Assembly (NCBI GenBank): GCA_002269645.1 | Contig: NIVC01002703.1 | Location: forward strand, 1-64,000 | DNA from: Macrostomum lignano | Lineage: Eukaryota | Length of the DNA stretch: 64,000 bases | Direction: 5' to 3' | Shown: piece after piece, positions 8,486-59,928 of the stretch | Layout of the letters: each line of letters opens with the position of its first letter | Numbering within the stretch: the stretch's first letter is position 1 | The notes under the pieces: model-generated | Database searches by the model: none | Seen by the model: the letters and a program-made list of their open reading frames with translations, nothing else | What the model was told of the DNA's origin: nothing | Position numbers and translations under genes: made by a program

Positions 8486-9820
8486 ATGGGTGCCAACAGT
8501 AGCTCACTGGCAGAGCTGTCCTCAAATGAGTACTTAATCCGACTGTGCGGCAAGCAGCCAATCTCCAGCAATGATCCCTATTGGAACCAGCTGCTTAGCT
8601 ATGCTTTTGTACCGCCAGTCACCAGTACAGATGCTAAACTGCTCGAGGAACAAACGGCCAACCTTCTAACCACTTTCACTGTTAATAATGTCTCATCTGG
8701 CAATCTCAATAGCCTGCTCAGAGTATTAGTTACCATGGTTTCCAATCTGCAACAGTTTGTACTCGAACCACTGGCTGATGGGCGTCAAAGTGACATATTC
8801 CTGATGCAGCTCTACAATGCTCTGTTCATCTCGCGTTGTATAATTAAACACCTGGTTGAGCAATTGAGCGATGAGTTGCTGCTGACTCAGATTGAGCACT
8901 GTCCAGACAAGCAGCTGCATCAGCGAAGGCTGCTCAATCAGCAGCGCCAGAGTCAGGGCGACGCCTCAGCTGCCACCAGCAAGCGCGACCTTGAAGAGGA
9001 CGACAACAGCGGTGACGAAAGCGACGAATCGAATTCCTCATCCGAGGCGGACGCCACCATGGTTGAAGAGCTGATAGAAGCTCTTGTACACTTGCTAGTG
9101 GTGCTCCCGGTTCGCGAGTCAACATTTCCTGTTGTGTACGAAAGTGTGTGCAGCCTTCTAGTGCTGCTCAGCGTTCAGATGTACCGAACTGAGCCGGCTG
9201 AGAAGCTGACCTTCTACCAGATCCTGTACACCGGCCGCTGCTCTATGCACGCCTTCCGCCTGATGGAGGTGCTATTGAAATACTATGTGCAGCGGCCGCC
9301 AGCTCCCGATAGAATGCTGGTCAATGCTGGTGGATCAGCCGGCCTTTATAATAGTCTGGCATCCGGCCTGTGGTCCATGGTCACTCTGGGCTACGGCTCC
9401 AACCCGGCTGCTGAGCAGCGAGCTCAGCTCCGCACTGGCCTGCTGGCCGACCAGAGCTGCCTGCTGTCTCTGGTGCTGGCCAATCACTGCGCCGGGGCCA
9501 GGCGGTTCCGCAATCCTTATCGAGAGGCCCTGCTCAGCTGCGCCCATGCCAATGATCCGGGCAATGTTGAGCATTTGTCATCAGCCGCTAGTAATCTGAT
9601 TAGTTTCCGAGTAGATTTCAATCTATTGTTGAAGGCCATCTGCGATAGGCTGCCTAGAGATGAAGCCCTGTTGATGCTGTATCTGCTGCTGCACTCGGCC
9701 GGTGGTCTGCAGTTCAGGGGCTACGTTGGCAGGCAGGGCGGAGACGACTCCCAGCTCGCTGGCCTGCTGCTGCCCATACTGCGAACTCTGCACTCTGAGG
9801 CTCAGAAGAGCTCGCATCAG
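8486..9820 (+). CDS. DYM: dymeclin, coding exon 1 (445 codons)
   Basis: N-terminal MGANSS myristoylation motif; acceptor-like TTGCAG at 8475-8480 just before the ATG; exon ends ...SSHQ at CAG|GTGAGA, phase 0. Confidence 0.92.
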
Positions 9821-10039
9821 GTGAGAGGCGGGGGTGGGCGGTTGAACACGGATTGACAGACAGACAAACACTAAGGCTCGAAGACACTAAAATTAAATAA
9901 AAGAGACACTAAGACAAATCAGAGAGATACCTGGAAAAAAAGACGGACAAACAGGCAAGAATAAAAGACAAAATAGACAATATGGCAAGACAAACAGCAC
10001 TAGGGCAGGCAAACAGACATTAAGACTATACGACACAGA

Positions 10040-11345
10040 CACTAAGGACAGGCACTAAGACAAGACAACACTGACATTAAGGACAGGCGCAAAAACAAGA
10101 CAACAAGGACATTAAGGACAGGCGCAAAGACAAGACAACACGGACACTAAGAACAGACACAAAGACAAGACAACAAGGACATTAAGGACAGGCACAAAGA
10201 CAAGACAACAAGGACATTAAGGACAGGCACAAAGACAAGACAACAAGGACATTAAGGACAGGCACAAAGACAAGACAACAAGGACATTAAGGACAGGCAC
10301 AAAGACAAGACAACAAGGACATTAAGGACAGGCACAAAGACAAGACAACAAGGACATTAAGAACAGGCACAAAGACAAGACAACAAGGACATTAAGGACA
10401 GGCACAAAGACAAGACAACAAGGACATTAAGGACAGGCACAAAGACAAGACAACAAGGACATTAAGGACAGGCACAAAGACAAGACAACAAGGACATTAA
10501 GGACAGGCACAAAGACAAGACAACAAGGACATTAAGGACAGGCACAAAGACAAGACAACAAGGACATTAAGAACAGGCACAAAGACAAGACAACAAGGAC
10601 ATTAAGAACAGGCACAAAGACAAGACAACAAGGACATTAAGAACAGGCACAAAGACAAGACAACAAGGACATTAAGAACAGGCACAAAGACAAGACAACA
10701 AGGACATTAAGAACAGGCACAAAGACAAGACAACAAGGACATTAAGAACAGGCACAAAGACAAGACAACACGGACATTAAGAACAGGCACAAAGACAAGA
10801 CAACAAGGACATTAAGGACAGGCACAAAGACAAGACAACAAGGACATTAAGGACAGGCACAAAGACAAGACAACAAGGACATTAAGGACAGGCACAAAGA
10901 CAAGACAACAAGGACATTAAGGACAGGCACAAAGACAAGACAACAAGGACATTAAGGACAGGCACAAAGACAAGACAACAAGGACATTAAGGACAGGCAC
11001 AAAGACAAGACAACAAGGACATTAAGAACAGGCACAAAGACAAGACAACAAGGACATTAAGAACAGGCACAAAGACAAGACAACAAGGACATTAAGAACA
11101 GGCACAAAGACAAGACAACACGGACATTAAGAACAGGCACAAAGACAAGACAACAAGGACATTAAGAACAGGCACAAAGACAAGACAACAAGGACACTAA
11201 GAACAGGCACAAAGACAAGACAACACGGACATTAAGAACAGGCACAAAGACAAGACAACAAGGACATTAACAGGCACAAAGACAAGACAACAAGGACATT
11301 AAGAACAGGCACAAAGACAAGACAACACGGACATTAAGAACAGAC
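10040..11345. repeat. 35-bp minisatellite (CAAGGACATTAAGGACAGGCACAAAGACAAGACAA), about 36 copies, inside the DYM intron
   Basis: period 35 (e.g. 10201, 10236). Confidence 0.95.
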
Positions 11346-11435
11346 ACTAAAACCAGACAAGACAGAAACTAACACAGAGACAGACAGACCAACAGTAGGA
11401 CTAACCCTAATCACAAAGCCCCAACCGCCTGACAG

Positions 11436-12305
11436 GTGTACATGGCCCTAATCGTACTGCTAATGCTAACCGAGTGCCAGCAGTTCTGCACCAGAGTTCA
11501 CGAGATCCAGCTGCAGCCAGCCAGCGTGTCGGGCTGGTTCACCGAGCGTCATCTTGGCTTGGTGTCTCTGGGCAGCCTGCTAGCCATTGTACTTTGCCGC
11601 ACTGTTCAGCTGAATGTTGGCCGGACTCGCGATAAATACCTGCACACCAACTGCCTGGCAGCTCTGGCTAACATGTCTACATACTTTGCCGGCCTGCATC
11701 CGTACGCCTGTCAGAAGCTACTTGGCCTGTTCGCTCACCTGGCCAAGAAGCAGAAGAAACTGGTTGATGAGATGCGGAGTAGGCCAGCCAATATGGCTGA
11801 GCTGGAGGCTGACCGGGCCTCAGTTGAGGATCTGATGCGCTGCATCCTTGAGATTGTTAATAACGCTTTGACCCACCGGTTGGCGGAGAATCCCCACCTG
11901 GTGTATACCCAGCTGCACCAGAGGGAGCTGTATCAGCCATTCTCTACTCATCCTGCTTTCCAAGACATTCTGCAGAACTTGGGCACAGTGATGCATCATT
12001 TCACTTCGGCTCTGGGCGAGAGCAGCTCTGAGCATCAGAATCAGCTCTCCGAGCACCGGGTCATGCGAGTCATCGAAGAACGAAGTCGCAGCTTTCGTCG
12101 GGATAGGCTGAAAAAATTCCCCGAACCAAAGTACAAATACGTTGAAGAGGAATCGCCAGACGAGTTCTTTATACCGTACATCTGGGCTCTGGTGTACAGA
12201 TCCTCGAATTTGTACTTTAATCCCAGCAAACTGCTGCTGCTGCAGTCTCAGCAGCAGTCGGAGTCGGATGACAAAGAAGGTCAAAGTCAAGAGGCAACGG
12301 CTTGA
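11436..12305 (+). CDS. DYM: dymeclin, coding exon 2 (spliced product 734 aa)
   Basis: CTGACAG|GTG TAC ATG; VYMALIVLLMLTE, RTRDKYLHTNCLAALANMS and KKFPEPKYKYVEEESPDEFFIPYIW are dymeclin hallmarks; AATAAA at 12347. Confidence 0.95.
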   Translation: MYMALIVLLMLTECQQFCTRVHEIQLQPASVSGWFTERHLGLVSLGSLLAIVLCRTVQLNVGRTRDKYLHTNCLAALANMSTYFAGLHPYACQKLLGLFAHLAKKQKKLVDEMRSRPANMAELEADRASVEDLMRCILEIVNNALTHRLAENPHLVYTQLHQRELYQPFSTHPAFQDILQNLGTVMHHFTSALGESSSEHQNQLSEHRVMRVIEERSRSFRRDRLKKFPEPKYKYVEEESPDEFFIPYIWALVYRSSNLYFNPSKLLLLQSQQQSESDDKEGQSQEATA

Positions 12306-12644: not shown

Positions 12645-14095
12645 CCGATTTGTGTTCTGACTTTGAATTCTCTCTTTCCTTACTGTTTGTTCTCTCGATG
12701 ACTGAGATAGATTTGGCCTGCCCCCATAGGCTAAGTTTCGTGTCTGGCTTTGACCTCTCTCCTTACTGCTCTCTCATTGGCTGAGCCAGTTTGGGCCTGT
12801 CCCCTAGACTGAGAGCCTCTTCACGGCAATCGGTTCTAGAACCAGAATAAATTCGAGTTCTAGAACCAGAACCAGTGTGAAGTGGGGAGCTTCGAACCCA
12901 TTTTATGTTTGACAGTCTTTACAATTTAATTTTGTCGTTCTTTGACTTTGTTTCCTCTTGGATATGACAAAAAAGGAATAATTATATAACAATAATAAAA
13001 AATTGACGATTTCAAATATATTTAACTGTTAAAGTGTAAACATGACAACGGTTCGAGAAAATTTCTCGAACCATATTCTAGAATCAGAACCATGTTCCGG
13101 AACTGATTCTGTTTTTCGAACCATCGATATGAAGGAGCCTCTTCATATCGCCGATTCGAGGGACGGAACCGGTTCCGAACCGGTTCGATGCTCTTCATAT
13201 CGAATCATATCATATCGTATCATATCATATCATATCATATCATATCATATCATATCATATCATATCATTCATATCATATCGAAGGAGCCTCTTCATATGG
13301 CCGATTCGAAAAACGGAACCGGTTCCGAACCGGTTCGATGCTCTTCATATCGATGGTTCGAAAAACAGAATCAGTTCCGGAACGAACATGGTTCTGGTTC
13401 TGGAATATGGTTCGAGAAATTTTCTCGAACCGTTGTCATGTTTACACTTTAACAGTTAAATATATTTGAAATCGTCAATTTTTTATTGTTGTTATATAAT
13501 TATTCCTTTTTTGTCATATCCAAGAGGAAACAAAGTCAAAGAACGACAAAATTAAATTGTAAAGACTGTCAAACATAAAATGGGTTCGAAGCTCCTCATT
13601 TCACACTGGTTCTGGTTCTAGAACTCGAATTTATTCTGGTTCTAAGACCAATTGCCGTGAAGAGGCTCATGTGCGTCAAACCGGTTCGGAGCATGCTTGG
13701 ATGCAACCTTGGGATTCACTCGGCCGTTTCTATTGGCAACACACACGTGTGTCGCTATATTGGACAGAATAGTAGTCACGTGACTGCTCTCAGCCAATAG
13801 CGACTTACATGTGTGTTGCCAATAGAAACGGCCGGGTGATTCCCGGGGTTGCGCATTTATGGTTCGGAACCGGTTCCGTTTTTCGAACCGGCGATATGAA
13901 GAGGCTCTGAGTTTCGTCTGTCTGACTTGGGCCTCTCTCCTTACTGCTCTCTCATTGGCTGAGCCAGATTGGGCCTGTCCCCTAGACTGAGTTTCGTTTG
14001 TCTGACTTGGGCCTCTCTCCTTACTGCCCTCTCATTGGCTGAGCTAGACTGGGCCTGCCCCCCTAGACTGAGATTCGTCCGTCTTGCTTTACTTG
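12645..14095. repeat. diverged ~72-75 bp tandem repeat (about 5 copies) that hosts the foldback insertion
   Basis: CTCTCTCCTTACTGCTCTCTCATTGGCTGAGCCAGATTGGGCCTGTCCCCTAGACTGAGTTTCG recurs on both sides of the insertion. Confidence 0.7.
12813..13907. mobile_element. composite foldback/MITE with GAGCCTCTTCA termini and a 3-bp TGA TSD (PIF/Harbinger-like)
   Basis: TGA at 12810-12812 and 13908-13910; the empty site TAGACTGAGTTTCG is in the next host unit; ~320-bp inverted arms 12813-13135 and 13343-13668; (ATATC)n core; second hairpin at about 13705-13852. Confidence 0.8.
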
Positions 14096-20287: not shown

Positions 20288-20980
<693 letters not shown>

Positions 20981-21025
20981 GGCCCTGTTCAATCACTATT
21001 GGCCCAATGAGTGCCACACATCTAA

Positions 21026-21865
<840 letters not shown>

Positions 21866-24492: not shown

Positions 24493-24874
24493 CGCACCGC
24501 AGAATATGAAATTTCACATTTCATTGCCTCCGGATTGAGGACCTAAAATAAAACACGCAAAAGTTCTGTAAAAATCTGGTCCGCCAAGGAAACCTTTATC
24601 TCACTGGCTGATTACAAATATTCTATTTACGGAACTGTTTAAACGCGTTTTTTTTATCTTGTCGAGAGTTGACATTTATAAATAATTCCGTCTGGCAAAC
24701 TCGAACTCTGCAGTTTCACATGGATAGGCGCTGGCAGGGCGCTTGTAAATCATGAAATCAGGGCCCGTTAAGCCGTTATCACAACGATAAGCCCAGTCTC
24801 TGTACACAGATATATAGGTAAGAAGCAATGGAGACAAAAACACCTGTTTGACCTCAGCTCAGTCGACCCGGATC

Positions 24875-25897
24875 ATGGCTCTGATTCTGATCCTGGTGAC
24901 GTACCGGAACAGCAGCAGCGAAGGCAGAGACCACGGCCGGTCATTCAGCATCGACTATGTCATTGTGGCCCTCTGCATCGTCCAGCTGCTGGTGTTCGCG
25001 CTGGGCACGGTTGGCAACCTGCTGCTGGTCAGCCTGCTGAGAGCCGAGAAGCTGCTGTTCTGGCGAATCATGCGGCTGACGGCGCTGTTCGACGTGTTGG
25101 CTCTGGTGCTGCACACCAACGACTGCTGGATGCATCTGATCGAGTACGCCAGCGCGGTGCCCAGCTCCTGGTTGGTGTACGTCGCCTACGTGCACACGCC
25201 GATGTCGATGCTGCAGATTGGCGCTGACACCACCCGGCTGTGCCTGACGATCTTCGCAGTCCTGAACCGTGCTTGGTGCCTCGCCAAGCGGTCCGACAAT
25301 GCCAGCTGCCGAGTCAGCTGCCGACTGCTGCCGTGGGTCGCCGGCGCCGTGCTGCTCACCCTGCCCCTTGTCGCTGCCGCCCGCATCGCTCTGGTCTCCA
25401 AGGCCGAGCTGACCGTCTGCCTGCCGCGCCGGCTGGAGGCCTGCCGGATGCGGCTGTACTTTGACTTCACCGACTTTCACCCGACGCTGAACTTCGCGCT
25501 GCAGAGCGCCCTTCTGGTGGCGCTGCCAATCGCTGTCTGTCTGTCCGCGAACGTCCTTCTAGCGATCTCCGTGTCCCGTAGAATCAACAGCTTCCAGCCG
25601 CCCGGCTCAAGTCGCGTCTTCAACGGCGGCGGCAACAACAGCGGCGTCAAGAAGCTCGGCGGACTTCGAGTGCTGATTCCCATGACGGTGGCCTTTGCCG
25701 TCTGCCAGCTGGGCAGATTCCTGTGGGAGTTGCGCCGGCAGAACGAGTGCGTGATGGTCCGGCTGGCTCTGTACTACATCGGCGTGCTGCTGCTGTCATT
25801 GGACTGTTCGGCGGGGTTTTACATCCAGGTGGCAGCCAGGCCGCGGCTGAGGGAGCGGGCAAGACGGCTGCTGGCATCGGCTGTCTGGTGGTCTTGA
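24875..25897 (+). CDS. intronless orphan rhodopsin-like (class A) 7TM GPCR, about 340 aa
   Basis: seven hydrophobic segments; TM1 GN (LGTVGNLLL), TM2 Asp (TALFD), NRA at the DRY position, CQL in TM6; N-terminal NSS sequon; first in-frame ATG at 24875. Confidence 0.8.
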   Translation: MALILILVTYRNSSSEGRDHGRSFSIDYVIVALCIVQLLVFALGTVGNLLLVSLLRAEKLLFWRIMRLTALFDVLALVLHTNDCWMHLIEYASAVPSSWLVYVAYVHTPMSMLQIGADTTRLCLTIFAVLNRAWCLAKRSDNASCRVSCRLLPWVAGAVLLTLPLVAAARIALVSKAELTVCLPRRLEACRMRLYFDFTDFHPTLNFALQSALLVALPIAVCLSANVLLAISVSRRINSFQPPGSSRVFNGGGNNSGVKKLGGLRVLIPMTVAFAVCQLGRFLWELRRQNECVMVRLALYYIGVLLLSLDCSAGFYIQVAARPRLRERARRLLASAVWWS

Positions 25898-33889: not shown

Positions 33890-35035
33890 AGCTGAGCTGC
33901 TGAAGCTTCAGGAGATGGGGTAGCTGAGGCCTGAAGTTTCAGGAGATAGGGTAGCTGAGCCCCTGAAGCTTCAGGAGATGGGGTAGCTGAAGCCTGAAGC
34001 TTCAGGAAATGGGGTAGCTGAGCCCCTGAAGCTTCAGAAGATGGGGTAGCTGAGCCCCTGAAGCTTCAGGAGATGGGGTAGCTGAGCCCCTAAAGCATTA
34101 GGAGATGGGGTAGCTGAGCCCCTGAAGTTTCAGAAGATGGGGTAGCTGAGGCCCTGAAGCTTCAGGAGATGGGGTAGCTGAGGCCCTGAAGCTTCAGGAG
34201 ATGGGGTAGCTGAAGCCCTGAAGCTTCAGGAGATGGGGTAGCTGAGCCCCTGAAGCTTCAGGAGATAGGGTAGCTGAAGCCCTGAAGCTTCAGGAGATGG
34301 GGTAGCTGAGCCCCTGAAGCTTCAGGAGATGGGGTAGCTGAGGCTTTGAAGCTTCAGGAGATGGGGTAGCTGAGCCCCCGAAGCTTCAGGAGATGGGGTA
34401 GCTGAAGCCCTGAAGTTTCAGGAGATGGGGTAGCTGAGGCCTGAAGCTTCAGGAGATGGGGTAGCTGAGGCTTTGAAGCTTCAGGAGATGGGATAGCTGA
34501 GCCCCTGAAGCTTCAGGAGATGAGGTAGCTGAGCCCCTGAAGCATTAGGAGATGGGGTAGCTGAGGCCCTGAAGTTTCAGAAGATGGGGTAGCTGAGCCC
34601 CTGAAGCATTAGGAGATGGGGTAGCTGAGGCCTGAAGCATTAGGAGATGGGGTAGCTAAGGCCCTGAAGCTTCAGGAGATGGGGTAGCTGAGGCCCTGAA
34701 GCTTCAGGAGATGGGGTAGCTGAGGCCCTGAAGCTTCAGAAGATGGTGTAGCTGAGCCCCTGAAGCATTAGGAGATGGGGTAGCTGAGGCCCTGAAGCTT
34801 CAGGAGATGGGGTAGCTGAGCCCCTGAAGCATTAGGAGATGGGGTAGCTGAGGCCCTGAAGCTTCAGGAGATGGGGTAGCTGAGCCCCTGAAGCATTAGG
34901 AGATGGGGTAGCGGAGGCCCTGAAGCTTCAGGAGATGGGGTAGCTGAGGCCCTGAAGCTTCAGGAGATGGGGTAGCTGAGCCACTGAAGCTTCAGCAGAT
35001 GTGGCAGCTGAGCCACTGAAGCTTCAGCTGAGCCG
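33890..35035. repeat. 31-32 bp minisatellite (GCTGAGGCCCTGAAGCTTCAGGAGATGGGGTA), about 35 copies
   Basis: the unit contains the 14-bp palindrome CCTGAAGCTTCAGG. Confidence 0.95.
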
Positions 35036-35983: not shown

Positions 35984-36712
35984 TTAGTTCGGCTTGGGCT
36001 CGCGATATCCTTCGTCTTCACGATTCAAAACATCAACAACTTGATTTCCCTGATCGCTGGTCGGTTGCGGGGACGAAGAAGCTCCGCCGCCATCATTGTC
36101 GTCCGTAGCTTCCGCTGAAATTCCGTTTGAAGACGTGCCAGCTTTCGCGGAGCCCTTCTGATCGTCGTTGCCAGGAGCCTCAGCGCCCCCTTCGCCGCCA
36201 GGATTGTCGACATCGCTAGGTTGAGCATTATCACCTCCAGTATCATTGGGAGGTGCAGTTGGTTCTGGAATCTGAGGCAGTAGGGGAATGCTAGCTCCGC
36301 CTGTTGTATCAGGAGAATCTGGGGTGTTATTATCGGCTTGACTGTTACTTCTACATCGATTTAGTTGAGGATACGCGATCCAAACGACAACAGCAGTAAT
36401 TACGACGATAAAGAATGCTAACAAAGCAATTAGTTCGATATTTTTGGATTCTCCGCCAGTAGAACTGGATGACGGAGTCGAGCTGGCATCGCTACCTGAT
36501 GCTGGTGTAGTGCTGGCAATCAGAGCCGAGCAATACCCATTTGCACGTTTCTGTTCGCAGATGTCAGGTGCGGGACCAGCTTTCAGACATTCTGGCGGGC
36601 ATTTATCGCACAAATAAGTGATTTTGTTAAAGTATTCGTCTGGCTGGCAGTCCCTCCGTGCGGACACAGAGACTGCGCAACCCAGCAACAGGAGACAAAA
36701 CTGCCACTTCAT
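35984..36712 (-). CDS. single-CRD TNF-receptor-like type I membrane protein, 242 aa
   Basis: signal peptide MKWQFCLLLLGCAVSVSA; C-x12-C-x2-C-x3-C-x9-C-x8-C; S/T stalk; TM LIALLAFFIVVITAVVVWIAY; acidic low-complexity tail. Confidence 0.8.
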   Translation of the reverse strand: MKWQFCLLLLGCAVSVSARRDCQPDEYFNKITYLCDKCPPECLKAGPAPDICEQKRANGYCSALIASTTPASGSDASSTPSSSSTGGESKNIELIALLAFFIVVITAVVVWIAYPQLNRCRSNSQADNNTPDSPDTTGGASIPLLPQIPEPTAPPNDTGGDNAQPSDVDNPGGEGGAEAPGNDDQKGSAKAGTSSNGISAEATDDNDGGGASSSPQPTSDQGNQVVDVLNREDEGYREPKPN

Positions 36713-36764
36713 AAAGCGAGAACAAAGTTTGCATATGTTTGAAGCTCAATAACATTTGCAGACA

Positions 36765-37615
36765 CTTCCTATTCCCTTATACAGCCACCCCCTATTCCCT
36801 GATACAGACAGTCCCTATTCCCTGATACAGACACCCCCTATTCCATGATACAGACACCCCCTATTCCCTGATACAGACACCCCCTATTCCCTGATACAGC
36901 CACCCCCTATTCCCTGATACAGACACCCCCTATTCCCTTATACAGACAGTCCCTATTCCCTGATACAGACACCCCCTATTCCATGATACAGACACCCCCT
37001 ATTCCCTGATACAGACACCCCCTATTCCATGATACAGACACTCCTTATTCCCTGATACAGACACCCCCTATTCCCTGATACAGACACCCCCTATTCCCTG
37101 ACACAGACACCCCCTATTCCCTGATACAGACAGTCCCTATTCCCTGATACAGACAGTCCCTATTCCCTGATACAGACAGTCCCTATTCCCTGATACAGAC
37201 ACCCCCTATTCCCTGATACAGACACCCCTTATTCCCTGATACAAACACCCCCTATTCCCTGATACAGACAGTCCCTATTCCCTGATACAGACACCCCTTA
37301 TTCCCTGATAGACAGTCCCTATTCTCTGATACAGACACCCCCTATTCCCTGATACAGACAGTCCCCATTCCCTGATACAGACACCCCTATTCCCTGATAC
37401 AGACACCCCCTATTCCCTGATACAGACACCCCTTATTCCCTGATACAGACACCCCCTATTCCCTGATACAGACACCCCCTATTCCCTGATACAGACACCC
37501 CCTATTCCCTGATACAGACACCCCCTATTCCCTGATACAGACACCCCCTATTCCCTGATACAGACAGTCCCCATTCCCTGAGTCCTGACAGACAGTCCCT
37601 ATTCCTTGATACGGA
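36765..37615. repeat. 23-bp minisatellite (CCCCTATTCCCTGATACAGACAC), about 36 copies
   Basis: direct inspection. Confidence 0.95.
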
Positions 37616-38057
37616 CAAAAATACAAACAAGTAAAGTTGTGAAGTCACTTGTCACTCTTGTTCACCGATACTTAAAAATAAAGAACTCGACAGTATGAGG
37701 CGGTTTAGAAACTATTATTTATGATAATAATACTCTAGCTGTACCAGTTTTATTATGAAATTACATTTTACAAGGCCTAAACTCGCTAAAAGCATCATAA
37801 AAATAAATTTGCGATCAAACGGTCCTTAGCCACAGAGTTTTCAAATTGAAATTTTCCTAATTTTGAATTGGTATGTCATTTTAATTACAGTGTTGTCTAA
37901 TTTAAAATCTATAAATAAAATCAAATGAAGCCTGATAGACTGACGCTGCACTTGCAAATTTCCTTGAAGGTCAAATATTCTCTGCTGCCAAATTCCAAAG
38001 AAACGGGGTATCCATTTTTGATAAAGTTTTTTTCAAGGTTTTACATTGCCTTCCTTG

Positions 38058-38140
38058 TCTGCGTGTCTGTCTATCTGTCTGTCTGTCTGTCTGTGTGTCT
38101 GCCTGTGTGTCTGTCTGTCTCTCTGTCTCTCTGTCTGTCT
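38058..38140. repeat. (TGTC)n microsatellite
   Basis: direct inspection. Confidence 0.8.
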
Positions 38141-38553
38141 ACAGACTCATTAAAATGATATGTCCGGGAGCAGGATTAAATTTCTTTCTGGCCTGGCCCC
38201 AGTCCGTGCCATAGACAGCTGGCAAAATATGGCTGCGCCAATGCATGATTAGAATTGAGTGTTCGCCAGATCAACAATATTTTGTTTGAAGGGTATTTTC
38301 TTTATAGGGTTTTTGCCATTGACTGTTTAGAATGAAACACACTAAGCAGATAGGATCAAGAAACAGCTGACATTTCGGCAAAAGACATCTGTTCTAAATA
38401 GAATAATTATAGCTAAAAAAACTTTTTAATTCACCTCGGACGAAAGAATTTGTGGATTTTTGCAAATTGACAGACATGATTTACGAATGTAGGATGAGAC
38501 GAGAATAAGAAATTTCATTAAAGTGCTTATCCACTCTTTAGCTTCCTTAGAAT

Positions 38554-39165
38554 TTAGATTTGGGAGTTTCCAATGGTGCTGGCGGTGGAGTCCTGTGGCT
38601 GGCTGTCAATTTCCAATGATGTTGGCGGATTGGTTTTTGTCACACCGACACCGGTGACCTTCATTGGGTCTGGCTGTGGAGGCTGGACCTCCGGATATTT
38701 CGTCTGCTGCTGAGAAGAAGTGGTTGGCTGGCCAGTTGGCGCGTGTCCGTTCGGATTGAGGCTCTCAGCCTCTTCCGCCCGATCGCCATCAGTAGTCTGC
38801 AGGTCCACCAGTTCATTCGTCTTACGCTGTCGATGCCGGTGCCGACAGACAAGCGCAACTATTGCCGCAACAATTGCGACCAATGCAATCACGCTGAACA
38901 CCGCAACAGCAACAATCGGGCCAGTCTTGGAAATGGACTCGTTAGTAATTAAACTGGAATTGCCAGTTACCAGGCCGGGGGAGCTGGTGGACATCTTAAC
39001 TGGCAAACTCGACGAACTGATGGGATGGCAGAACCCGCCAGACCACAGTCTCTCACACTCTGGTGTTGAACCACCAGACAAACATTTCTCAGGACAATTG
39101 TCGCACATTTTACTGAGCTCATAGTAGTACTGATGTGGCGGACACTTTGGTGCACTGGCCGCCAT
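38554..39165 (-). CDS. second single-CRD TNF-receptor-like membrane protein, 203 aa (no signal peptide in this exon)
   Basis: C-x12-C-x2-C-x3-C-x8-C-x8-C; TM IVAVAVFSVIALVAIVAAIVALV followed by RHRHRQRK; acceptor-like TTCCAG just upstream of the ATG. Confidence 0.8.
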   Translation of the reverse strand: MAASAPKCPPHQYYYELSKMCDNCPEKCLSGGSTPECERLWSGGFCHPISSSSLPVKMSTSSPGLVTGNSSLITNESISKTGPIVAVAVFSVIALVAIVAAIVALVCRHRHRQRKTNELVDLQTTDGDRAEEAESLNPNGHAPTGQPTTSSQQQTKYPEVQPPQPDPMKVTGVGVTKTNPPTSLEIDSQPQDSTASTIGNSQI

Positions 39166-50989: not shown

Positions 50990-53900
50990 TGTTGTGTATT
51001 TGCTTTGCTAACTAATTATAGTCATTCATAGACGGACTTTTGATTTAGATATTAGTCTATGGTTCATAGGGATTAAGTTTGACTGTACACATTTATTTGC
51101 TTCAAGTCTCGATACTTTTCATTTAAATATAAAACAAGCTACAAGCGCGCTACCGCTAAGACACTTCAACTTCTAACTTCCCAAAAGTTTTACCGCCTTT
51201 GCGTTATTCAAAACGTAACATGGCGACGAGGTAAACACGCTGGAGGTCTTGAGCAAGTGGTATAATTACTGACTACTTCAGACCAGCAATTTCAATGGCT
51301 CAGTCGTGGCTAGATTTCCGACTTGGAGAACTACCGCTTTCTTATCCTGAGATTGAGCAGTACTTCAAGAGACTGCAGTTTTACCTGGTGGCTTCAGGCA
51401 AGCGGGAACAATCCAAAGCTGTACTTTTGGCAATGTGCAGAGACGCAGCTTTCACTCTAATAAAGGAGCTTTTAAAGCCAAAAGACATCGCTAAGGATGA
51501 GGTGACTTATGAAAATATTCAGACATCGCTAACGGCACACTTCAAGCCCAAAACGTTACTTCACTACAAGAGGCATGTGCTTCATTCAATGGTGCAGAAG
51601 GAGGGCGAGTCGATTTCTACCTTCGTTGAAATTCTGAAGCGTCAGGCCAATAAATGCCAGTTCGGCGATCTCCGAGAAGAACTCATTCTGTCGCAGTTCA
51701 TATTCGGCCTACGCAATCAAGCACTGAAGCAGAAGCTCCTTTCGAAAGAGGATCTCGCTTTGGCCGCTGCAATTCAAGATGGCTTGCTAGCCAAATCAAT
51801 TAATGTGGCTACAAATCCGTCGAACGCAATCGCTGCGGTGCAGAACAAAGGCCATACCGGACTTTTTAAGCAAGAGAAGAAGGCCCCGGCTTACAATAAA
51901 CAGCCTTACAATTCGGACAATCGCAAGAGACATTCGAAGCCTCATGAAACTGGACAATGCCACACCTGCGGAAAGGTAGGACACGTCAGATCAAAGTGCC
52001 GCTTTAGGGACGCGCAATGTCGAAAGTGTGGAAAAGTTGGACATCTTGCAGCAGTTTGTCGTTCGAAGACTGTGAATGCAGTGCAAAGCGTAGTAAGATC
52101 AGAAGATGCTAGCCATGAGCATGTGGGAGCAGTCTACACAGCAGCTGGCATTGGAGACCCAACGGATCAGTGGTTTGCTACCTGCAAGATCGGAGATGCG
52201 AGCGTTAAGATGCTAGTGGATACTGGGAGTCAAGTTACCATTATACCCAAGAAGGTTGCCGATATTTCCAATCTACCATCCAAACCGATTTCGAAAATGC
52301 TCAGGTCCTACGGTGGCTTTCAGCCCACCATATATTCAGTCATTCCGGATGCAACCATTACTCTGTCTGACAAAAGATACGCTATTGGACATGTCTATGT
52401 TGGAAACGATTCGATGGCCATTCTCGGCATGGATTTCCTATCGCGCCTAAACCTATTGCACTTCGATAGTAGCATTTCTAAAGACGTCCTTTGCCTACCA
52501 GTTGTGCGCGATGCAAACGACAGATTTCTTGCGAGTTTCTGCCTTCGCTCGGATGCTAAAATGGAAGGTATGCGGTACCCTGCCAGATCTCTGCCTTTTT
52601 CAATGAAGTCTATGGTAGAGACCGAGCTCAAGAGACTACTGAGTGCGGGAATAATTTACCCAGTTGAAAATCCAACAGTGTCAGCACCAATAGTTCCGGT
52701 TTTAAAGCAGCAAGGCTCAGCTAGACCAATAAGGCTATGCGGTGACTACTCACTCACTCTGAATCGCATAATTGATGCTGATCGATACAAGTTTCCGAAG
52801 TTAGAAGAAATTCTTTCTAAAATTCCCAATGCGAAGTTCTACTCTGTCCTGGATTTAGAGGAAGCATTTCTACAAGTTGCACTGTCTCCGGAGAGTCAAG
52901 AACTTACCTGCATATCGACTCATATTGGTTATTTTGCATTCAGGAACCTCCAATTCGGAATCTCTGCAGCGCCTCTTATTTTCCAAGAGGTCATGGACGA
53001 CGTACTAAGAGACATAGAATGCACAGCGTCATATCAATATGACATATTAATCAGAACATCCGGTGACCAACAGCAACACATGCAGGTGCTGAACATGGTA
53101 AAGCAATGCTTAGCCGACCATGGGTTCAAGATTAACACGCGCAAGTCTCAGGAGTGTCAACAAAAGGTCAAGTTTCTTGGTTTCATTCTCCACAACGGAA
53201 GGCTCGAACCAGATCCTGCCAGATTAAAGTCGTGGGACAACATGCCAAAACCCGCTGACAAAGACCAATTGAGAAGCGTCTTGTGCACTCTTCGCCACTA
53301 TGGCTTATTCTGCAGAAATTTCTCCATCATTGCTCGACCGCTGTACTCGTTGCTGAAGGAGGGACAGCACTGGTACTGGAACAACGAACTATCAAAGGCC
53401 ATCGGGAGACTAAAGCAAAGCATCCGCCAAGGAGTAATCACTGCGTACGATCTGTCAAAACCATTATTCTTGACCTGTGATGCATCTAAAAAGGGACTAG
53501 GATTCGTGCTCTCTCATGACAGAGAACAGATGCAGATTGTCTGGCTCGGAAGCAGAGTGCTCACGCCCGCAGAGTGCAATTACGCTAACATTGAAAGAGA
53601 AGCATTGGCAATCGTGGAAGGAGTGAAGTATTTCCATCAGTTTTTAGCTGGAAGAAGATTCACTATTTTATCAGATCACAGACCGCTACAGTTCATCTTC
53701 AATCACAGCAAATCGTCTGAACGTGTTTCAGCCAGATTGCAACGCTGGTCTCTCATTCTGCAAGCATATGAATACAACATTGAATACGCCAAAGGTAGTA
53801 CAATGTTTGCTGCCGATACGCTTTCGCGACTTCCGAGTGGTGAATTACTGCCCAATGAATCTGTGAACTTATTGTCAATCAATGCGTTGGACAGTTTTGC

Positions 53901-55336
53901 AAACTCTGATGATTTATTGCATCGCATTGCTATGTCTAACGACCACAACCTTCGGACACTAAAGCATTATATTCAGAATGGATGGCCGGAGTACCTACCC
54001 AAGACTATACTGCCGTACTCGAAAGGAAAGTTGGAATATACAATTCAGAATGCTGTTGTATTCATAGGATTGCGGATTGTACCACCGCAAGGGCTAAGAA
54101 CTGAAATTTTACATCTGCTCCACGAGAATCATCCAGGAGTGGTGCGCATGATTCGCTTGGCACGACAATATTTCTGGTGGCCAGGTATTGACACGCAGAT
54201 TAACAGCTTCGTGCGCAGGTGCGCCCAGTGTCAGCTTCACGCGAGGAAGAGAACAAATGCGAATTTATCGTCCTGGGAGGATGCGCAGACATTCTTTGAA
54301 AGAGTCCACGCAGACATAGCTATGTTCAAAGGACACAAGTTTCTAGTGCTAGTAGACGCGTTCTCCAAGTGGGTGGATGTTCGACACGTTGATTCACTTA
54401 AGTCACAATCGGTGGTTCGGGCGTTTCGACATACTTTCAAGTACATGGGTATACCGAAGACGCTGGTGACTGATAATGGTACAAACTTCACTTCACTTGA
54501 ATTCGCTACGTTCCTCAAAGAGAACTTTGTGCAGCACGTTCTGACTCCATCAGGTCATCATCAGTCGAATGGGCAAGTGGAGCGAGCAATCGAAGAGTTC
54601 AAGTTTTACTTGAAAAAGAACAACGCTAGTTCTGATACAGCTGAACTAGAGCGACTCATTGTCAGGTTCTGTCTGTTTCAGAATACTACACCGCAATGCA
54701 ACGGTTCTATTCCTGCTGGTTTGGTGTTTCATCAACTTTCTAGAACTCGCCTGTCAAGTGTGTGCACTGACTGGACCAAGCCAAGACAGCAGCCTGACCC
54801 AGTTTACATTCGTGTGGAACACAAGGAAGAGAAGGTTCCGTCCACAGTTACTACTTCTGTTGGGACAAATACATTTCGTGACAACAAAGGTCGTCTGGTT
54901 CATCAATCGGACATTTCTCCTAGACTACCAGCTGAGACTGACGAATTCAATGCCAACGAAAGTTCAGATCCTATTCCTGAGGACAAGGCTAGCGAGGAGA
55001 CAGCTGGCAAAGCAACGGCTCCTGCTGAAAACGTACGCAGGAGTTCGCGTCAATGACGACCTCCAGATCGTTTCGGTTATTGACGAATATCAGCATTGGT
55101 GGGGGTGTTGTGTATTTGCTTTTCTAACTAATTATAGTCATTCATAGACGGACTTTTGATTTAGATATTAGTCTATGGTTCATAGGGATTAAGTTTGACT
55201 GTACACATTTATTTGCTTCAAGTCTCGATACTTTTTGTTTAAATATAAAACAAGCTACAAGCGCGCTACCGCTAAGACACTTCAACTTCTAACTTCCCAA
55301 AAGTTTTACCGCCTTTGCGTTATTCAAAACGTAACA
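50990..55336 (+). mobile_element. full-length Ty3/gypsy LTR retrotransposon (Mag-like)
   Basis: 231-bp LTRs (50990-51220, 55106-55336) with 3 mismatches and TG...CA ends; 5-bp TSD ATCAG; PBS TGGCGACGAGG (tRNA-Ser type); purine tract GGTGGGGG before the 3' LTR. Confidence 0.97.
51295..55056 (+). CDS. gag-pol polyprotein, 1253 aa, probably RT-inactive
   Basis: two CCHC knuckles, protease LVDTGS, RT with YQYD in place of YxDD, RNase H (CDAS, EREALA), HHCC plus DDE integrase, in gypsy domain order. Confidence 0.95.
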   Translation: MAQSWLDFRLGELPLSYPEIEQYFKRLQFYLVASGKREQSKAVLLAMCRDAAFTLIKELLKPKDIAKDEVTYENIQTSLTAHFKPKTLLHYKRHVLHSMVQKEGESISTFVEILKRQANKCQFGDLREELILSQFIFGLRNQALKQKLLSKEDLALAAAIQDGLLAKSINVATNPSNAIAAVQNKGHTGLFKQEKKAPAYNKQPYNSDNRKRHSKPHETGQCHTCGKVGHVRSKCRFRDAQCRKCGKVGHLAAVCRSKTVNAVQSVVRSEDASHEHVGAVYTAAGIGDPTDQWFATCKIGDASVKMLVDTGSQVTIIPKKVADISNLPSKPISKMLRSYGGFQPTIYSVIPDATITLSDKRYAIGHVYVGNDSMAILGMDFLSRLNLLHFDSSISKDVLCLPVVRDANDRFLASFCLRSDAKMEGMRYPARSLPFSMKSMVETELKRLLSAGIIYPVENPTVSAPIVPVLKQQGSARPIRLCGDYSLTLNRIIDADRYKFPKLEEILSKIPNAKFYSVLDLEEAFLQVALSPESQELTCISTHIGYFAFRNLQFGISAAPLIFQEVMDDVLRDIECTASYQYDILIRTSGDQQQHMQVLNMVKQCLADHGFKINTRKSQECQQKVKFLGFILHNGRLEPDPARLKSWDNMPKPADKDQLRSVLCTLRHYGLFCRNFSIIARPLYSLLKEGQHWYWNNELSKAIGRLKQSIRQGVITAYDLSKPLFLTCDASKKGLGFVLSHDREQMQIVWLGSRVLTPAECNYANIEREALAIVEGVKYFHQFLAGRRFTILSDHRPLQFIFNHSKSSERVSARLQRWSLILQAYEYNIEYAKGSTMFAADTLSRLPSGELLPNESVNLLSINALDSFANSDDLLHRIAMSNDHNLRTLKHYIQNGWPEYLPKTILPYSKGKLEYTIQNAVVFIGLRIVPPQGLRTEILHLLHENHPGVVRMIRLARQYFWWPGIDTQINSFVRRCAQCQLHARKRTNANLSSWEDAQTFFERVHADIAMFKGHKFLVLVDAFSKWVDVRHVDSLKSQSVVRAFRHTFKYMGIPKTLVTDNGTNFTSLEFATFLKENFVQHVLTPSGHHQSNGQVERAIEEFKFYLKKNNASSDTAELERLIVRFCLFQNTTPQCNGSIPAGLVFHQLSRTRLSSVCTDWTKPRQQPDPVYIRVEHKEEKVPSTVTTSVGTNTFRDNKGRLVHQSDISPRLPAETDEFNANESSDPIPEDKASEETAGKATAPAENVRRSSRQ

Positions 55337-58987: not shown

Positions 58988-59623
58988 GTAAGTGACTTGA
59001 CGTGTAATTTCAAGATCAAATCGAAACTACTTTTATAGACCAAAGTAAAGACAGGAAGCAAATTATGCTCGTAGCCTATTAGTTAACATATCTTCTCTTA
59101 CCCTAAAAGGGATAGATTTTGTACAAAAGTAGCTTATTTTATGATTTACTGGTGTGCCCATTGGTGCTACAACTTCAGGGGCCAGATAAAGAATTCAGCA
59201 CATGGCTGCGGGCCAGAATCACAGATAAAGGAAAGGTGAAAGAATAGAATATGAGAGAGGAGACTAGAAAGTACTAGATAAGAGGAGAGGAGAGAATTGA
59301 GAGAGGAGAGAAGGGATAATAGTGCTAAGAAGACACAAACCTTAAGCAGTCTGGATTGCTATTGTTAAGTTTCACAGAAAACAACTTTGTATAAACTAAT
59401 ATTTTATCAACTATAAATTCCCGGAGTTATTAATCCTCGAGCACTAATTAGATGACGAGTTACTTGCTAGTTACTCCCGCCGTTTACCCACAGGCATCAC
59501 GATTTATTGTTGAAAATGATAACGCACGTTTCTTAAGCCCACAGCTTTTCGAAATTCGCTCCAGCTTGGATGAGCTAATCCCTGGGCCAATCTCAAACAA
59601 TTTTTTATTCAAAACTCTTGCAG

Positions 59624-59928
59624 ACGACGGCCAGGACCGGCACAGACCGCGCAAAAATCGGCAACCTCGCCGTCGCGCTGGCGGCAGCGGCTCCGGGGAT
59701 GCCACATCGTCTGGCGGCGGCGAGTGCGGCTGTTTGATTCGGGCCACACTGAACAGCCGGAAGCTGAGCACAGTGGTGCACCAGAAAGATGTCAATCGGT
59801 TCCAATTGGCATTCTCCAGCTTGCTCAAAGGCAACATTGACGGGCTTAAAAAGCGGGATAAAAAAGCCGCCGCTGCTGCCACTGCCGCCGCTTCCGCTGC
59901 TGCCAAAGCCAAGGCCAAGGCTAGCTAA
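59624..59928 (+). CDS. SRP14: SRP14 exon 3 (spliced product 134 aa)
   Basis: TTGCAG|AC completes Y of YDG; CLIRAT...KLSTVV...FQLAFSSLLKGNIDGLKKRDKK is the SRP14 signature. Confidence 0.95.

What the first reader, a model, noticed from the sequence alone, without database searches (positions are those of the whole stretch)
35984..39165. Tandem pair of single-CRD TNF-receptor-like genes with BCMA/TACI-type cysteine spacing in an invertebrate
Seen: both have C-x12-C-x2-C-x3-C-x8/9-C-x8-C with a (E/Q)Y(F/Y) motif, a stalk, one TM and a low-complexity tail without a death domain. One has a signal peptide; the other lacks one in its exon. Established: BCMA/TACI CRDs begin C-x12-C-x2-C-x3-C-x8-C with EYFD, BCMA/TACI are type III (no signal peptide), and fly Grindelwald is a single-CRD TNFR. 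The DxL ligand-binding motif is replaced (NKI, YEL) and the paralogues are highly diverged outside the cysteines. Inference: a fast-evolving lineage-specific receptor family for immunity or regeneration.
Basis: partly seen in the sequence, partly recalled or inferred. Interest (0 to 1): 0.7.

Follow-up and report, generated by a model that had tools for sequence, protein, structure and literature searches.

The report
Tandem TNF-receptor-like genes in a flatworm
Two neighbouring genes of the flatworm Macrostomum lignano encode small single-pass membrane proteins whose six-cysteine outer domain resembles the ligand-binding module of TNF receptors such as EDAR and BCMA. The resemblance is specific but too weak to prove, so they are candidate TNF receptors found so far only in this species.

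Summary
Two single-exon ORFs on the minus strand, A (35984-36712, 242 aa) and B (38554-39165, 203 aa), are real paralogues (30% identity, E 3e-14). They share the framework C-x12-C-x2-C-x3-C-x8/9-C-x8-C, a Ser/Thr-rich stalk, one transmembrane segment and a low-complexity tail. The organism is Macrostomum lignano. The pair is collinear in two other contigs of its assembly and is annotated only as hypothetical proteins.

The TNFR reading is plausible but unproven.
- For: A's cysteine-rich domain (CRD) hits only TNFRSF chains in the PDB (EDAR, BCMA), though at E 0.13-0.5. It is as similar to BCMA as TACI is. Cysteine-preserving shuffles do not reproduce this.
- Against: no Pfam model matches at E<=10, and B alone hits no TNFR. 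An exhaustive HMMER search of 1.84 billion proteins finds no relative outside the species. Both AlphaFold models are unusable (pLDDT 48-50). No death domain or TRAF motif is present.

The last cysteine spacing (x8) is canonical-TNFR-like rather than BCMA/TACI-like (x3). There is no similarity to TACI, and Grindelwald's 8-Cys pattern differs.

Best reading (about 0.55): divergent single-CRD TNFR-like receptors, one type I and one probably type III. Moderate interest.

The parts
35984..36712 (-). Gene A, single coding exon, 242 aa: signal peptide, 6-Cys CRD, Ser/Thr stalk, TM, acidic low-complexity tail
   Evidence: ORF. A 92%-identical product is annotated in M. lignano. Collinear copies exist in L001 and L002.
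36659..36712 (-). A residues 1-18, signal-peptide-like segment MKWQFCLLLLGCAVSVSA, with V/A at positions -3/-1 before RRD
   Evidence: Read from the translation. The ATG is replaced by CTG in L001 and CAG in L002.
36530..36649 (-). A CRD, C22 to C61: C-x12-C-x2-C-x3-C-x9-C-x8-C
   Evidence: Regex hit. All eight PDB hits at E<=10 are TNFRSF chains: EDAR at 0.13 and seven BCMA sequences at 0.26-0.48. Only one non-synonymous change separates the three genome copies.
36371..36433 (-). A transmembrane segment, about residues 94-114 (LIALLAFFIVVITAVVVWIAY)
   Evidence: It is the only Kyte-Doolittle region above 1.6 over 19 aa.
35987..36370 (-). A cytoplasmic tail, residues 115-242: G/D/P/N/S-rich, net charge about -15, no death domain and no TRAF consensus
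   Evidence: dN/dS is about 1.7 against the other copies.
38554..39165 (-). Gene B, single coding exon, 203 aa: no signal peptide, 6-Cys CRD, Ser/Thr stalk with two N-x-S/T sites, TM, tail ending in S-Q-I
   Evidence: ORF. A 96%-identical product is annotated in M. lignano.
39028..39144 (-). B CRD, C8 to C46: C-x12-C-x2-C-x3-C-x8-C-x8-C
   Evidence: Regex hit. Homologous to A's CRD. Alone it gives no TNFRSF hit in the PDB.
38845..38919 (-). B transmembrane segment, about residues 83-107, followed by RHRHRQRK. By the positive-inside rule this predicts N-terminus out.
   Evidence: and the sequence.
36759..37581 (.). 23-bp minisatellite (about 36 copies) filling much of the spacer between B and A. 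It is not part of either gene.
   Evidence: Tandem Repeats Finder.

Best explanation
A and B are a duplicated pair of divergent, single-CRD members of the TNF-receptor superfamily, found so far only in Macrostomum.

Each displays one small disulfide-bonded domain on a flexible, probably glycosylated Ser/Thr stalk. The first half of the domain (C1-x12-C2, with the aromatic E/Q-Y-F/Y pair) is a TNFR 'A1' beta-hairpin of the EDAR/BCMA kind. The second half (C3-x3-C4-x8/9-C5-x8-C6) is a two-disulfide module whose spacing fits the canonical TNFR CRD better than BCMA's.

Inferred mechanism: the hairpin and second module dock in the groove between protomers of one of the worm's trimeric Eiger/EDA-like TNF ligands. 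Three receptors are thereby clustered. The disordered tails, which lack a death domain, recruit adaptors or modulate another receptor.

A enters the membrane as a type I protein through a cleaved signal peptide. B most likely enters as a type III protein (N-terminus out, no signal peptide), as BCMA does.

What is shown: gene structure, paralogy, topology features, cysteine framework, and a specific but statistically marginal similarity to EDAR and BCMA. What is inferred: the fold, the disulfide pairing, ligand binding and signalling.
For: (1) Both CRDs have six Cys spaced within the range of TNFR CRDs. A matches the PROSITE TNFR_NGFR_1 pattern as I recall it, and B misses it at one non-Cys position (the pattern is from memory).

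(2) An unbiased phmmer search of the PDB with full-length A puts BCMA first (E 0.05). With A's CRD alone, all eight hits at E<=10 are TNFRSF: EDAR CRD1 and seven BCMA constructs. Full-length B has BCMA second (E 0.74). The A+B profile has EDAR first (E 0.2).

(3) Three cysteine-preserving shuffles of A's CRD hit only unrelated proteins. In local Smith-Waterman tests against such shuffles, A-BCMA has z 4.5, A-EDAR A1 has z 8.8 and B-EDAR A1 has z 4.6.

(4) Yardstick: A-BCMA (score 61) is at least as strong as the pair of accepted paralogues TACI CRD2-BCMA (58). A TACI query does not find BCMA in the PDB at E<=0.001. Weak E-values are therefore normal within this family.

(5) The hydrophobic hairpin-tip position (BCMA Leu17 in DSL) is kept as Ile in A (NKI) and Leu in B (YEL).

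(6) The architecture (one CRD, stalk, one TM, tail without death domain, 200-240 aa) is that of BCMA, Wengen and Grindelwald (PMC8024323).

(7) M. lignano encodes 6-10 TNF ligands, grouped with Eiger/EDA. Only one NGFR-like receptor was recognised by standard searches (PMC7519573). A later preprint using custom HMMs counts 16 Wengen-like receptors and 1 Grindelwald-like receptor in this species.

(8) The CRD is the constrained part. Between the three genome copies there is 1 non-synonymous change in A's CRD against 13.5 in its tail.
Against: - No Pfam family (TNFR_c6, BCMA-Tall_bind, TACI-CRD2 or any other) matches either protein or either CRD at E<=10.
- All PDB E-values are 0.05 or worse. 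Shuffled controls reach the same bit scores against unrelated proteins (15.7 bits). The evidence therefore lies in which proteins are hit, not in significance.
- B's CRD alone hits no TNFR, and B-BCMA is borderline (p about 0.05).
- The profile's EDAR hit (E 0.2) is no better than a hydrogenase subunit at E 0.21.
- AlphaFold2 gave pLDDT 47.5 and 49.9, with mostly helical guesses and no beta-hairpin. Foldseek found nothing meaningful.
- No homologue exists outside M. lignano among 1.84 billion representative proteins, so there is no bridge to known TNFRs.
- The tails have no death domain and no TRAF2/TRAF6 consensus.
It is therefore not fully independent.
Confidence: 0.55

Rival explanations
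1. They are lineage-specific small cysteine-rich surface proteins unrelated to TNFRs, for example adhesion, recognition or reproduction-related orphan genes. On this view the cysteine framework and aromatic motif resemble the TNFR A1 module by convergence.
For: There is no significant match to any family model and no homologue outside the species. PDB scores are no higher than those of shuffled controls against random proteins. B alone shows no TNFR signal. AlphaFold does not recognise a TNFR fold. The tails have no TNFR-type signalling motifs.
Against: The weak hits are exclusively TNFRSF and come from two different members. Similarity beyond the cysteines is as strong as between BCMA and TACI. 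Topology, size and domain order all fit single-CRD TNFRs.
Confidence: 0.3
2. They are orthologues of Drosophila Grindelwald and may include the single 'Grnd' homologue that a preprint counts in M. lignano.
For: They have the same overall architecture and almost the same length (A is 242 aa). The tail lacks a death domain. A preprint reports one Grnd-like protein in M. lignano found with an in-house HMM.
Against: The Grnd CRD has 8 Cys in X2 and C2 modules, with C-x3-C...C-x3-C in the second half (PMC8024323). A and B have 6 Cys with different spacing. No PDB search returned the Grnd chains. The preprint's accession could not be read.
Confidence: 0.07
3. They are true orthologues of vertebrate BCMA/TACI, implying a BAFF/APRIL-type system in a flatworm.
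For: The first five cysteines have exactly BCMA's spacing, with EYF. B is type III, like BCMA.
Against: The last spacing is x8, not x3. The DxL motif is absent. There is no similarity to TACI CRD2 (z about 0). EDAR's A1 module matches better than BCMA does. The Pfam BCMA and TACI models do not match. The worm's ligands group with Eiger/EDA.
Confidence: 0.03
4. One or both are decaying duplicates or annotation artefacts with no function.
For: In two of three genome copies A's ATG is CTG or CAG. One copy of B has a frameshifted tail. A's tail has dN/dS above 1. The annotated products are all 'partial'.
Against: The ORFs are intact in the window. Both CRDs keep all six Cys and are nearly invariant in all copies. 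The two paralogues have kept the framework through about 70% sequence divergence. The gene names derive from a transcriptome-based annotation, which implies expression (an inference from PMC8629364).
Confidence: 0.05

Closest known systems
EDAR (TNFRSF EDAR), first (A1) module of CRD1, PDB 7x9g chain C
   Same: It is the best PDB match of A's CRD and of the A+B profile. [20 protein letters not shown] aligns with DCQPDEYFNKITYLCDKCPP, sharing C-x12-C-x2-CPP, the EY-aromatic motif, N, T and L. The z-score is 8.8 against cysteine-preserving shuffles. The worm's TNF ligands group with Eiger/EDA.
   Different: EDAR has several CRDs and a death domain. Only about 20 residues align. After C3 the spacing is x2 in EDAR and x3 here. 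E is 0.13-0.2, which is not significant.
BCMA (TNFRSF17)
   Same: It has a single CRD and the same spacing for the first five Cys (C-x12-C-x2-C-x3-C-x8-C), with the EYF motif. It is type III with no signal peptide, like B, and has a short tail without a death domain. It is the top PDB hit of full-length A.
   Different: Its last pair is C-x3-C (D2 helix-loop-helix module), against C-x8-C here. The DxL ligand-contact motif is replaced by NKI and YEL. BCMA has TRAF-binding sites (established knowledge), and none is found here. Pfam BCMA-Tall_bind does not match.
Grindelwald (Drosophila TNFR)
   Same: It is an invertebrate type I receptor of about 240 aa, with a signal peptide, one CRD, a TM and a tail without a death domain. 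Like A and B, it is undetectable with Pfam TNFR_c6.
   Different: It has 8 Cys in X2+C2 modules and four disulfides. No sequence similarity was detected here.
Wengen (Drosophila TNFR)
   Same: It is a single canonical-type CRD receptor without a death domain. A preprint reports a 'Wengen-like' class expanded to 16 in M. lignano.
   Different: Wengen is larger and has a long N-terminal extension (CRD within residues 78-201 per PMC8024323).
TACI CRD2 (TNFRSF13B), PDB 1xu1 chain R
   Same: It shares the C-x2-C-x3-C core and an aromatic residue in the hairpin.
   Different: Its spacing is C-x14...x6...x3. It shows no similarity to A or B beyond the cysteines (z -0.6 and 0.1).

Membership tests
TNF receptor superfamily (CRD-containing receptors) | Six-Cys CRD with spacing in the range C-x(10-15)-C-x(0-2)-C-x(2-3)-C-x(7-11)-C-x(7-9)-C and an aromatic residue 4-6 positions after C1 | tested here: met
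   A is x12, x2, x3, x9, x8 with Y at +5. B is x12, x2, x3, x8, x8 with Y at +5. The PROSITE PS00652 regex, recalled from memory, matches A and fails B at one non-Cys position. 13.5% of cysteine-preserving shuffles of A also match, so beyond the spacing this adds little.
TNF receptor superfamily (CRD-containing receptors) | Match to the family profile (Pfam PF00020 TNFR_c6) at or near the gathering score | tested here: not met
   No Pfam family was reported at E<=10 for the full proteins or the CRDs alone. Caveat: the same model is reported to miss Grindelwald.
TNF receptor superfamily (CRD-containing receptors) | TNFR CRD fold: beta-hairpin A1 module plus a second module, with disulfides 1-2, 3-5, 4-6 | tested here: inconclusive
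   AlphaFold2 gave pLDDT 47.5 (A) and 49.9 (B) on a 4-row alignment. Foldseek gave nothing below E 4.
TNF receptor superfamily (CRD-containing receptors) | Sequence similarity to accepted members beyond the cysteines | tested here: inconclusive
   A has only TNFRSF hits in the PDB, but at E 0.05-0.5. Its z-score is 4.5 (BCMA) and 8.8 (EDAR A1) against shuffles, comparable with TACI-BCMA at z 4.0. B alone has no TNFRSF hit.
TNF receptor superfamily (CRD-containing receptors) | Single-pass type I or type III membrane topology with the CRD outside | tested here: met
   A has a signal peptide and one TM. B has no signal peptide, one TM and a basic cluster just after the TM.
TNF receptor superfamily (CRD-containing receptors) | Binds a trimeric TNF-family ligand | not testable with these tools
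   No multimer prediction or binding assay was available. Ligands exist in the species.
TNF receptor superfamily (CRD-containing receptors) | Cytoplasmic death domain or TRAF-binding motif | tested here: not met
   There is no Pfam death domain. There is no [PSAT]x[QE]E, PxQxxD or PxExx[aromatic/acidic] motif in either tail. This feature is not universal in the family.
BCMA/TACI/BAFF-R subgroup | A1 module followed by a C2/D2 helix-loop-helix module with C-x3-C ... C-x3-C | tested here: not met
   The first C-x3-C is present, but the second pair is C-x8-C in both A and B. BCMA and TACI have x3.
BCMA/TACI/BAFF-R subgroup | DxL motif at the hairpin tip | tested here: not met
   NKI in A and YEL in B at the aligned positions. 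Only the hydrophobic third position is kept.
BCMA/TACI/BAFF-R subgroup | Match to Pfam BCMA-Tall_bind or TACI-CRD2 | tested here: not met
   No hit at E<=10.
Grindelwald family | Eight-Cys CRD made of X2 and C2 modules (four disulfides) | tested here: not met
   A and B have six Cys with different spacing, against the description in PMC8024323.
Grindelwald family | Intracellular Traf2- and Veli/Lin-7-binding regions | not tested
B ends in S-Q-I, a class I PDZ-ligand-like C-terminus. This is only a hint.

The most novel reading that the evidence does not exclude
The pair is a previously unrecognised class of flatworm TNF receptor. Its CRD would combine an EDAR/BCMA-type A1 hairpin with a second module not seen in that combination. 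It would be invisible to the standard TNFR models and would serve as receptor for the expanded Eiger/EDA-like ligands of Macrostomum. That would overturn the 'one NGFR-like TNFR per platyhelminth' picture. As an added twist, two of the three genome copies of gene A may depend on the ATG at the end of the trans-spliced leader for their start codon.
Probability: 0.25. Interest if true: 0.6.

Novelty: new member of a known kind. Interest (0 to 1): 0.4.

Why it matters
Standard searches credit flatworms with one NGFR-like TNF receptor, yet the free-living, regenerating model Macrostomum lignano carries several TNF ligands (PMC7519573). Very short single-CRD receptors such as Grindelwald escaped sequence-based detection in flies for years.

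If A and B bind the worm's TNF ligands, they would supply missing receptors for that system. This would be in an animal where RNAi and transgenesis allow direct tests in regeneration, stem-cell control and immunity. They would also add a data point on how ancient the EDAR/BCMA-type A1 hairpin is.

If they do not bind, they are simply a species-restricted pair of orphan surface proteins.

Tried and rejected
- Pfam scans of the full proteins and of the CRDs alone at E<=10 found no relevant family.
- Word-indexed homologue searches with A and B found only M. lignano copies.
- The exhaustive HMMER profile search of 1.84 billion representatives found only the M. lignano proteins. It also returned three long repetitive proteins (chitin-binding and others) whose scores come from many partial repeats. 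I rejected these as spurious.
- My third homologue search, using the short CRD alignment, was wasted. The tool needs three shared 5-residue words and returned nothing.
- A metagenome scan with the CRD patterns gave 70 pattern matches, none confirmed.
- Two AlphaFold2 runs (A's CRD, B's ectodomain) gave pLDDT below 50. Foldseek on both was meaningless or empty.
- A concatenate of 20 shuffled CRDs as a PDB control returned nothing. On reflection it was insensitive, because HMMER's filters scale with query length. I replaced it with three single-decoy searches.
- I looked for the spliced-leader sequence in the window and found none.
- I looked for the gene names in the literature and for the preprint's M. 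lignano accessions. Neither was found.
- I considered an upstream signal-peptide exon for B. The annotated transcripts of all copies begin 6-14 nt upstream of the ATG, so I judged it unlikely. It cannot be excluded without RNA reads.
- I considered an operon reading from the shared 'Mlig007169' name. The name also covers copies on different contigs, so it proves nothing.
Full report
WHAT IS THERE

The stated interval runs exactly from the stop codon of one minus-strand ORF to the ATG of the next.

Gene A (35984-36712, 242 aa) reads MKWQFCLLLLGCAVSVSA|RRD-C-QPDEYFNKITYL-C-DK-C-PPE-C-LKAGPAPDI-C-EQKRANGY-C. It continues with a 30-residue stalk that is one-third serine, then one hydrophobic segment (about residues 94-114). 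Its tail of about 128 residues is rich in G/D/P/N/S and has net charge about -15.

Gene B (38554-39165, 203 aa) reads MAASAPK-C-PPHQYYYELSKM-C-DN-C-PEK-C-LSGGSTPE-C-ERLWSGGF-C. It has a similar stalk with two N-x-S/T sites and one hydrophobic segment (about residues 83-107) followed by RHRHRQRK. Its T/Q/P-rich tail ends in S-Q-I.

The framework C-x12-C-x2-C-x3-C-x8/9-C-x8-C occurs nowhere else in the six-frame translation of the window.

The two proteins are clear paralogues. BLASTP gives 30% identity over 122 residues spanning CRD, stalk and TM, with E 3e-14. The CRD-only score lies 9.8 SD above cysteine-preserving shuffles. Invariant between them are the six Cys, the P two residues after C1, the Y, the D after C2, the P after C3, the L after C4, a P before C5 and the E after C5.

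ORGANISM, COPIES AND GENE MODELS

The only database relatives are Macrostomum lignano proteins. These are BOX15_Mlig007169g1 and g3 (A-type, 92% identical), Mlig007169g2 (B-type, 96%) and Mlig032005g1 (B-type with a frameshifted tail). All are annotated 'hypothetical protein, partial'.

Two other contigs of assembly GCA_002269645.1 carry the same B-then-A pair, collinear with the window over more than 15 kb at 92-97% identity. This fits the known partial genome duplication of this strain (PMC8629364). They differ by minisatellite length and by about 1.7 kb between the genes that the window lacks.

Both coding regions are single exons.

B has no signal peptide. The annotated products of all copies begin only 2-4 codons upstream of its ATG. 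An upstream coding exon is therefore unlikely. With the basic cluster after the TM, an N-out type III topology is the simplest reading (inference).

A's genomic ATG exists only in the window copy. The other two copies have CTG and CAG at that codon (see 'noticed in passing').

Between copies, A's CRD has 1 non-synonymous and 1-2 synonymous changes (dN/dS 0.13-0.26). Its tail has 13.5 non-synonymous against 2.5 synonymous changes (about 1.7). B overall is 0.44. The counts are small, but the CRD appears to be the constrained part.

IS THE DOMAIN A TNFR CRD? NEGATIVE AND INCONCLUSIVE TESTS

- No Pfam model matches the proteins or the isolated CRDs, even at E<=10.
- A profile of the CRDs scored against all 1.84 billion representative proteins returns only the M. 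lignano proteins themselves. It also returns three long repetitive proteins that collect score from many partial repeats.
- A metagenome scan found nothing.
- AlphaFold2, limited to a four-row alignment, gave pLDDT 47.5 and 49.9. Foldseek on those models is meaningless.

IS THE DOMAIN A TNFR CRD? POSITIVE BUT WEAK TESTS

- phmmer of full-length A against all PDB chains puts BCMA first (E 0.05).
- A's CRD alone returns eight hits at E<=10, and every one is a TNF-receptor chain. They are EDAR CRD1 (E 0.13; [20 protein letters not shown] against DCQPDEYFNKITYLCDKCPP) and seven BCMA constructs (E 0.26-0.48).
- Full-length B has BCMA second (E 0.74).
- The A+B profile has EDAR first (E 0.2), although a hydrogenase subunit follows at 0.21.
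- B's CRD alone finds no TNFR.

CONTROLS

Three cysteine-preserving shuffles of A's CRD reach similar bit scores (up to 15.7) but against unrelated proteins: FAAP20, CCL15, a lipoprotein, a transporter and PsaC. None hits a TNFR. The scores as such are thus at chance level. What is not at chance level is that the real sequence picks two different TNFRSF members and nothing else.

Smith-Waterman scores against 3000-5000 cysteine-preserving shuffles:

| Pair | z | p |
|---|---|---|
| A vs BCMA | 4.5 | about 0.002 |
| A vs EDAR A1 | 8.8 | none of 3000-5000 shuffles |
| B vs EDAR A1 | 4.6 | 0.001 |
| B vs BCMA | 1.9 | 0.05 |
| A vs TACI CRD2 | -0.6 | - |
| B vs TACI CRD2 | 0.1 | - |

As a yardstick, the accepted paralogues TACI CRD2 and BCMA score 58 (z 4.0), slightly less than A vs BCMA (61). 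A TACI query does not retrieve BCMA from the PDB at E<=0.001. Insignificant E-values are therefore what true members of this family give each other. The negative profile searches weigh less than they would for a larger domain.

WHICH KIND OF CRD?

The first five cysteines have BCMA's spacing exactly. The sixth follows after 8 residues, not 3. The second half is therefore not the C-x3-C...C-x3-C helix-loop-helix (C2/D2) of BCMA, TACI, Fn14 or Grindelwald (for Grindelwald, for BCMA and TACI, Fn14 from memory). The x8 spacing lies in the range of canonical six-Cys TNFR CRDs. A matches the PROSITE TNFR_NGFR_1 pattern as I recall it, and B fails it at a single non-Cys position (the pattern is from memory).

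TACI CRD2 is C-x14-C-x2-C-x3-C-x6-C-x3-C with KFYD.

At the hairpin tip, BCMA's D-S-L aligns with N-K-I in A and Y-E-L in B. The acidic residue is lost and the hydrophobic one is kept.

Grindelwald has eight Cys in X2+C2 modules (PMC8024323). It is an analogue in architecture, not a sequence relative.

The fairest label is 'single CRD with an EDAR/BCMA-type A1 module and an atypical second module'.

HOW IT MOST LIKELY WORKS

This section is inference. A (type I) and B (probably type III) display one small disulfide-rich domain on an O-/N-glycosylated stalk. By analogy with BCMA-APRIL, EDAR-EDA and Grnd-Eiger, the domain would sit in the groove between two protomers of a TNF trimer, clustering three receptors.

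M. lignano has the ligands. Four to ten TNF-domain proteins were found by Bertevello et al. (PMC7519573), and six by a later preprint, which groups them with Eiger and EDA. That grouping agrees with EDAR being the best match.

The tails have no death domain and no TRAF2/TRAF6 consensus. Signalling, if any, would go through unrecognised motifs or a co-receptor. For B it might go through its PDZ-ligand-like S-Q-I end. A decoy or modulatory role is equally possible.

I put this reading at about 0.55. An unrelated orphan cysteine-rich surface protein gets about 0.3. The remaining rivals, taken together, get about 0.15 (Grindelwald orthologue, true BCMA/TACI orthologue, decaying duplicate).

NOVELTY

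The genes are annotated only as hypothetical proteins. No paper in the searchable library mentions them.

The published survey of platyhelminth TNFRs recognises a single NGFR-like receptor per species (PMC7519573). A 2024-2026 preprint using in-house HMMs counts 16 Wengen-like receptors and 1 Grindelwald-like receptor in M. lignano. The accessions are not in the text held here, so I cannot tell whether A or B are among them.

If the TNFR reading is right, this is a new, very divergent member of a known kind of receptor. It is of moderate interest, mainly because the species is a tractable regeneration model with unassigned TNF ligands.

SURROUNDINGS

The window is ordinary M. lignano chromosome. 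It carries:
- dymeclin, in two exons (8486-12305, + strand);
- beta-tubulin (20318-21865, + strand);
- an SRP14-like gene (59452-59928, + strand);
- a Ty3/gypsy-type retrotransposon with an open gag-pol frame (51295-55056, + strand);
- a multi-pass membrane ORF without a Pfam match (24848-25897, + strand).

It also carries many minisatellites that create long spurious ORFs. Nothing nearby bears on TNF signalling.

Noticed in passing
window 36710-36712 (minus strand); L001 about 9978-9980; L002 about 13936-13938: Gene A's start codon is ATG only in the window copy. The other two genome copies have CTG and CAG there, and A contains no other Met. The M. lignano spliced leader ends in ATG (PMC8629364). 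In L002, 'ttcccgctttcag|AAGTGG' is a good acceptor that would put the leader's ATG in frame (M-K-W...). A second in-frame AG ('tggcag|TTTTGT') is present in all three copies. The start codon may therefore be donated by trans-splicing. This is untestable without RNA reads.
   Followed up: partly
L001 6045-6554 (protein P0004): This copy of gene B has a frameshift just after the TM (…NEQVDLQ then out of frame), giving 169 aa instead of 203. It is either a decaying duplicate or a long-read indel error.
   Followed up: partly
window 38140-38238, against L001 6971-8694 and L002 10928-12651: About 1.7 kb lying between B and A in the other two copies is absent from the window, next to a (TGTC)n microsatellite at 38056-38140. 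I did not examine what the extra DNA is.
   Followed up: no
window 36759-37581, 34000-35027, and roughly 14.7-15.7, 17.3-18.9, 19.5-20.3, 27.5-28.4, 29.1-30.3, 31.5-32.2 and 32.7-33.2 kb: The window has a very high density of minisatellites (23-bp and 32-bp units measured, others seen as repetitive ORFs). They produce long open frames on both strands that are not genes. The array lengths differ between genome copies.
   Followed up: partly
window 51295-55056 (+): A Ty3/gypsy-type LTR retrotransposon has one uninterrupted 1253-aa gag-protease-RT-RNase H-integrase frame, so it is possibly a young, active copy. The LTRs were not mapped and the sequence was not handled further.
   Followed up: no
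window 8486-12305 (+), 20318-21865 (+), 59452-59928 (+), 24848-25897 (+): The neighbouring genes are dymeclin (two exons split at about 9856/11436), beta-tubulin (split at about 20950/21038), an SRP14-like ORF, and a 349-aa multi-pass membrane ORF with no Pfam match that could be a divergent GPCR.
   Followed up: partly
window 38554-38562 (minus strand, C-terminus of B): B ends in -N-S-Q-I, which fits a class I PDZ-binding C-terminus (S/T-x-hydrophobic). It is conserved in the L002 copy. Grindelwald signals partly through the PDZ protein Veli/Lin-7, so this may deserve a test.
   Followed up: no
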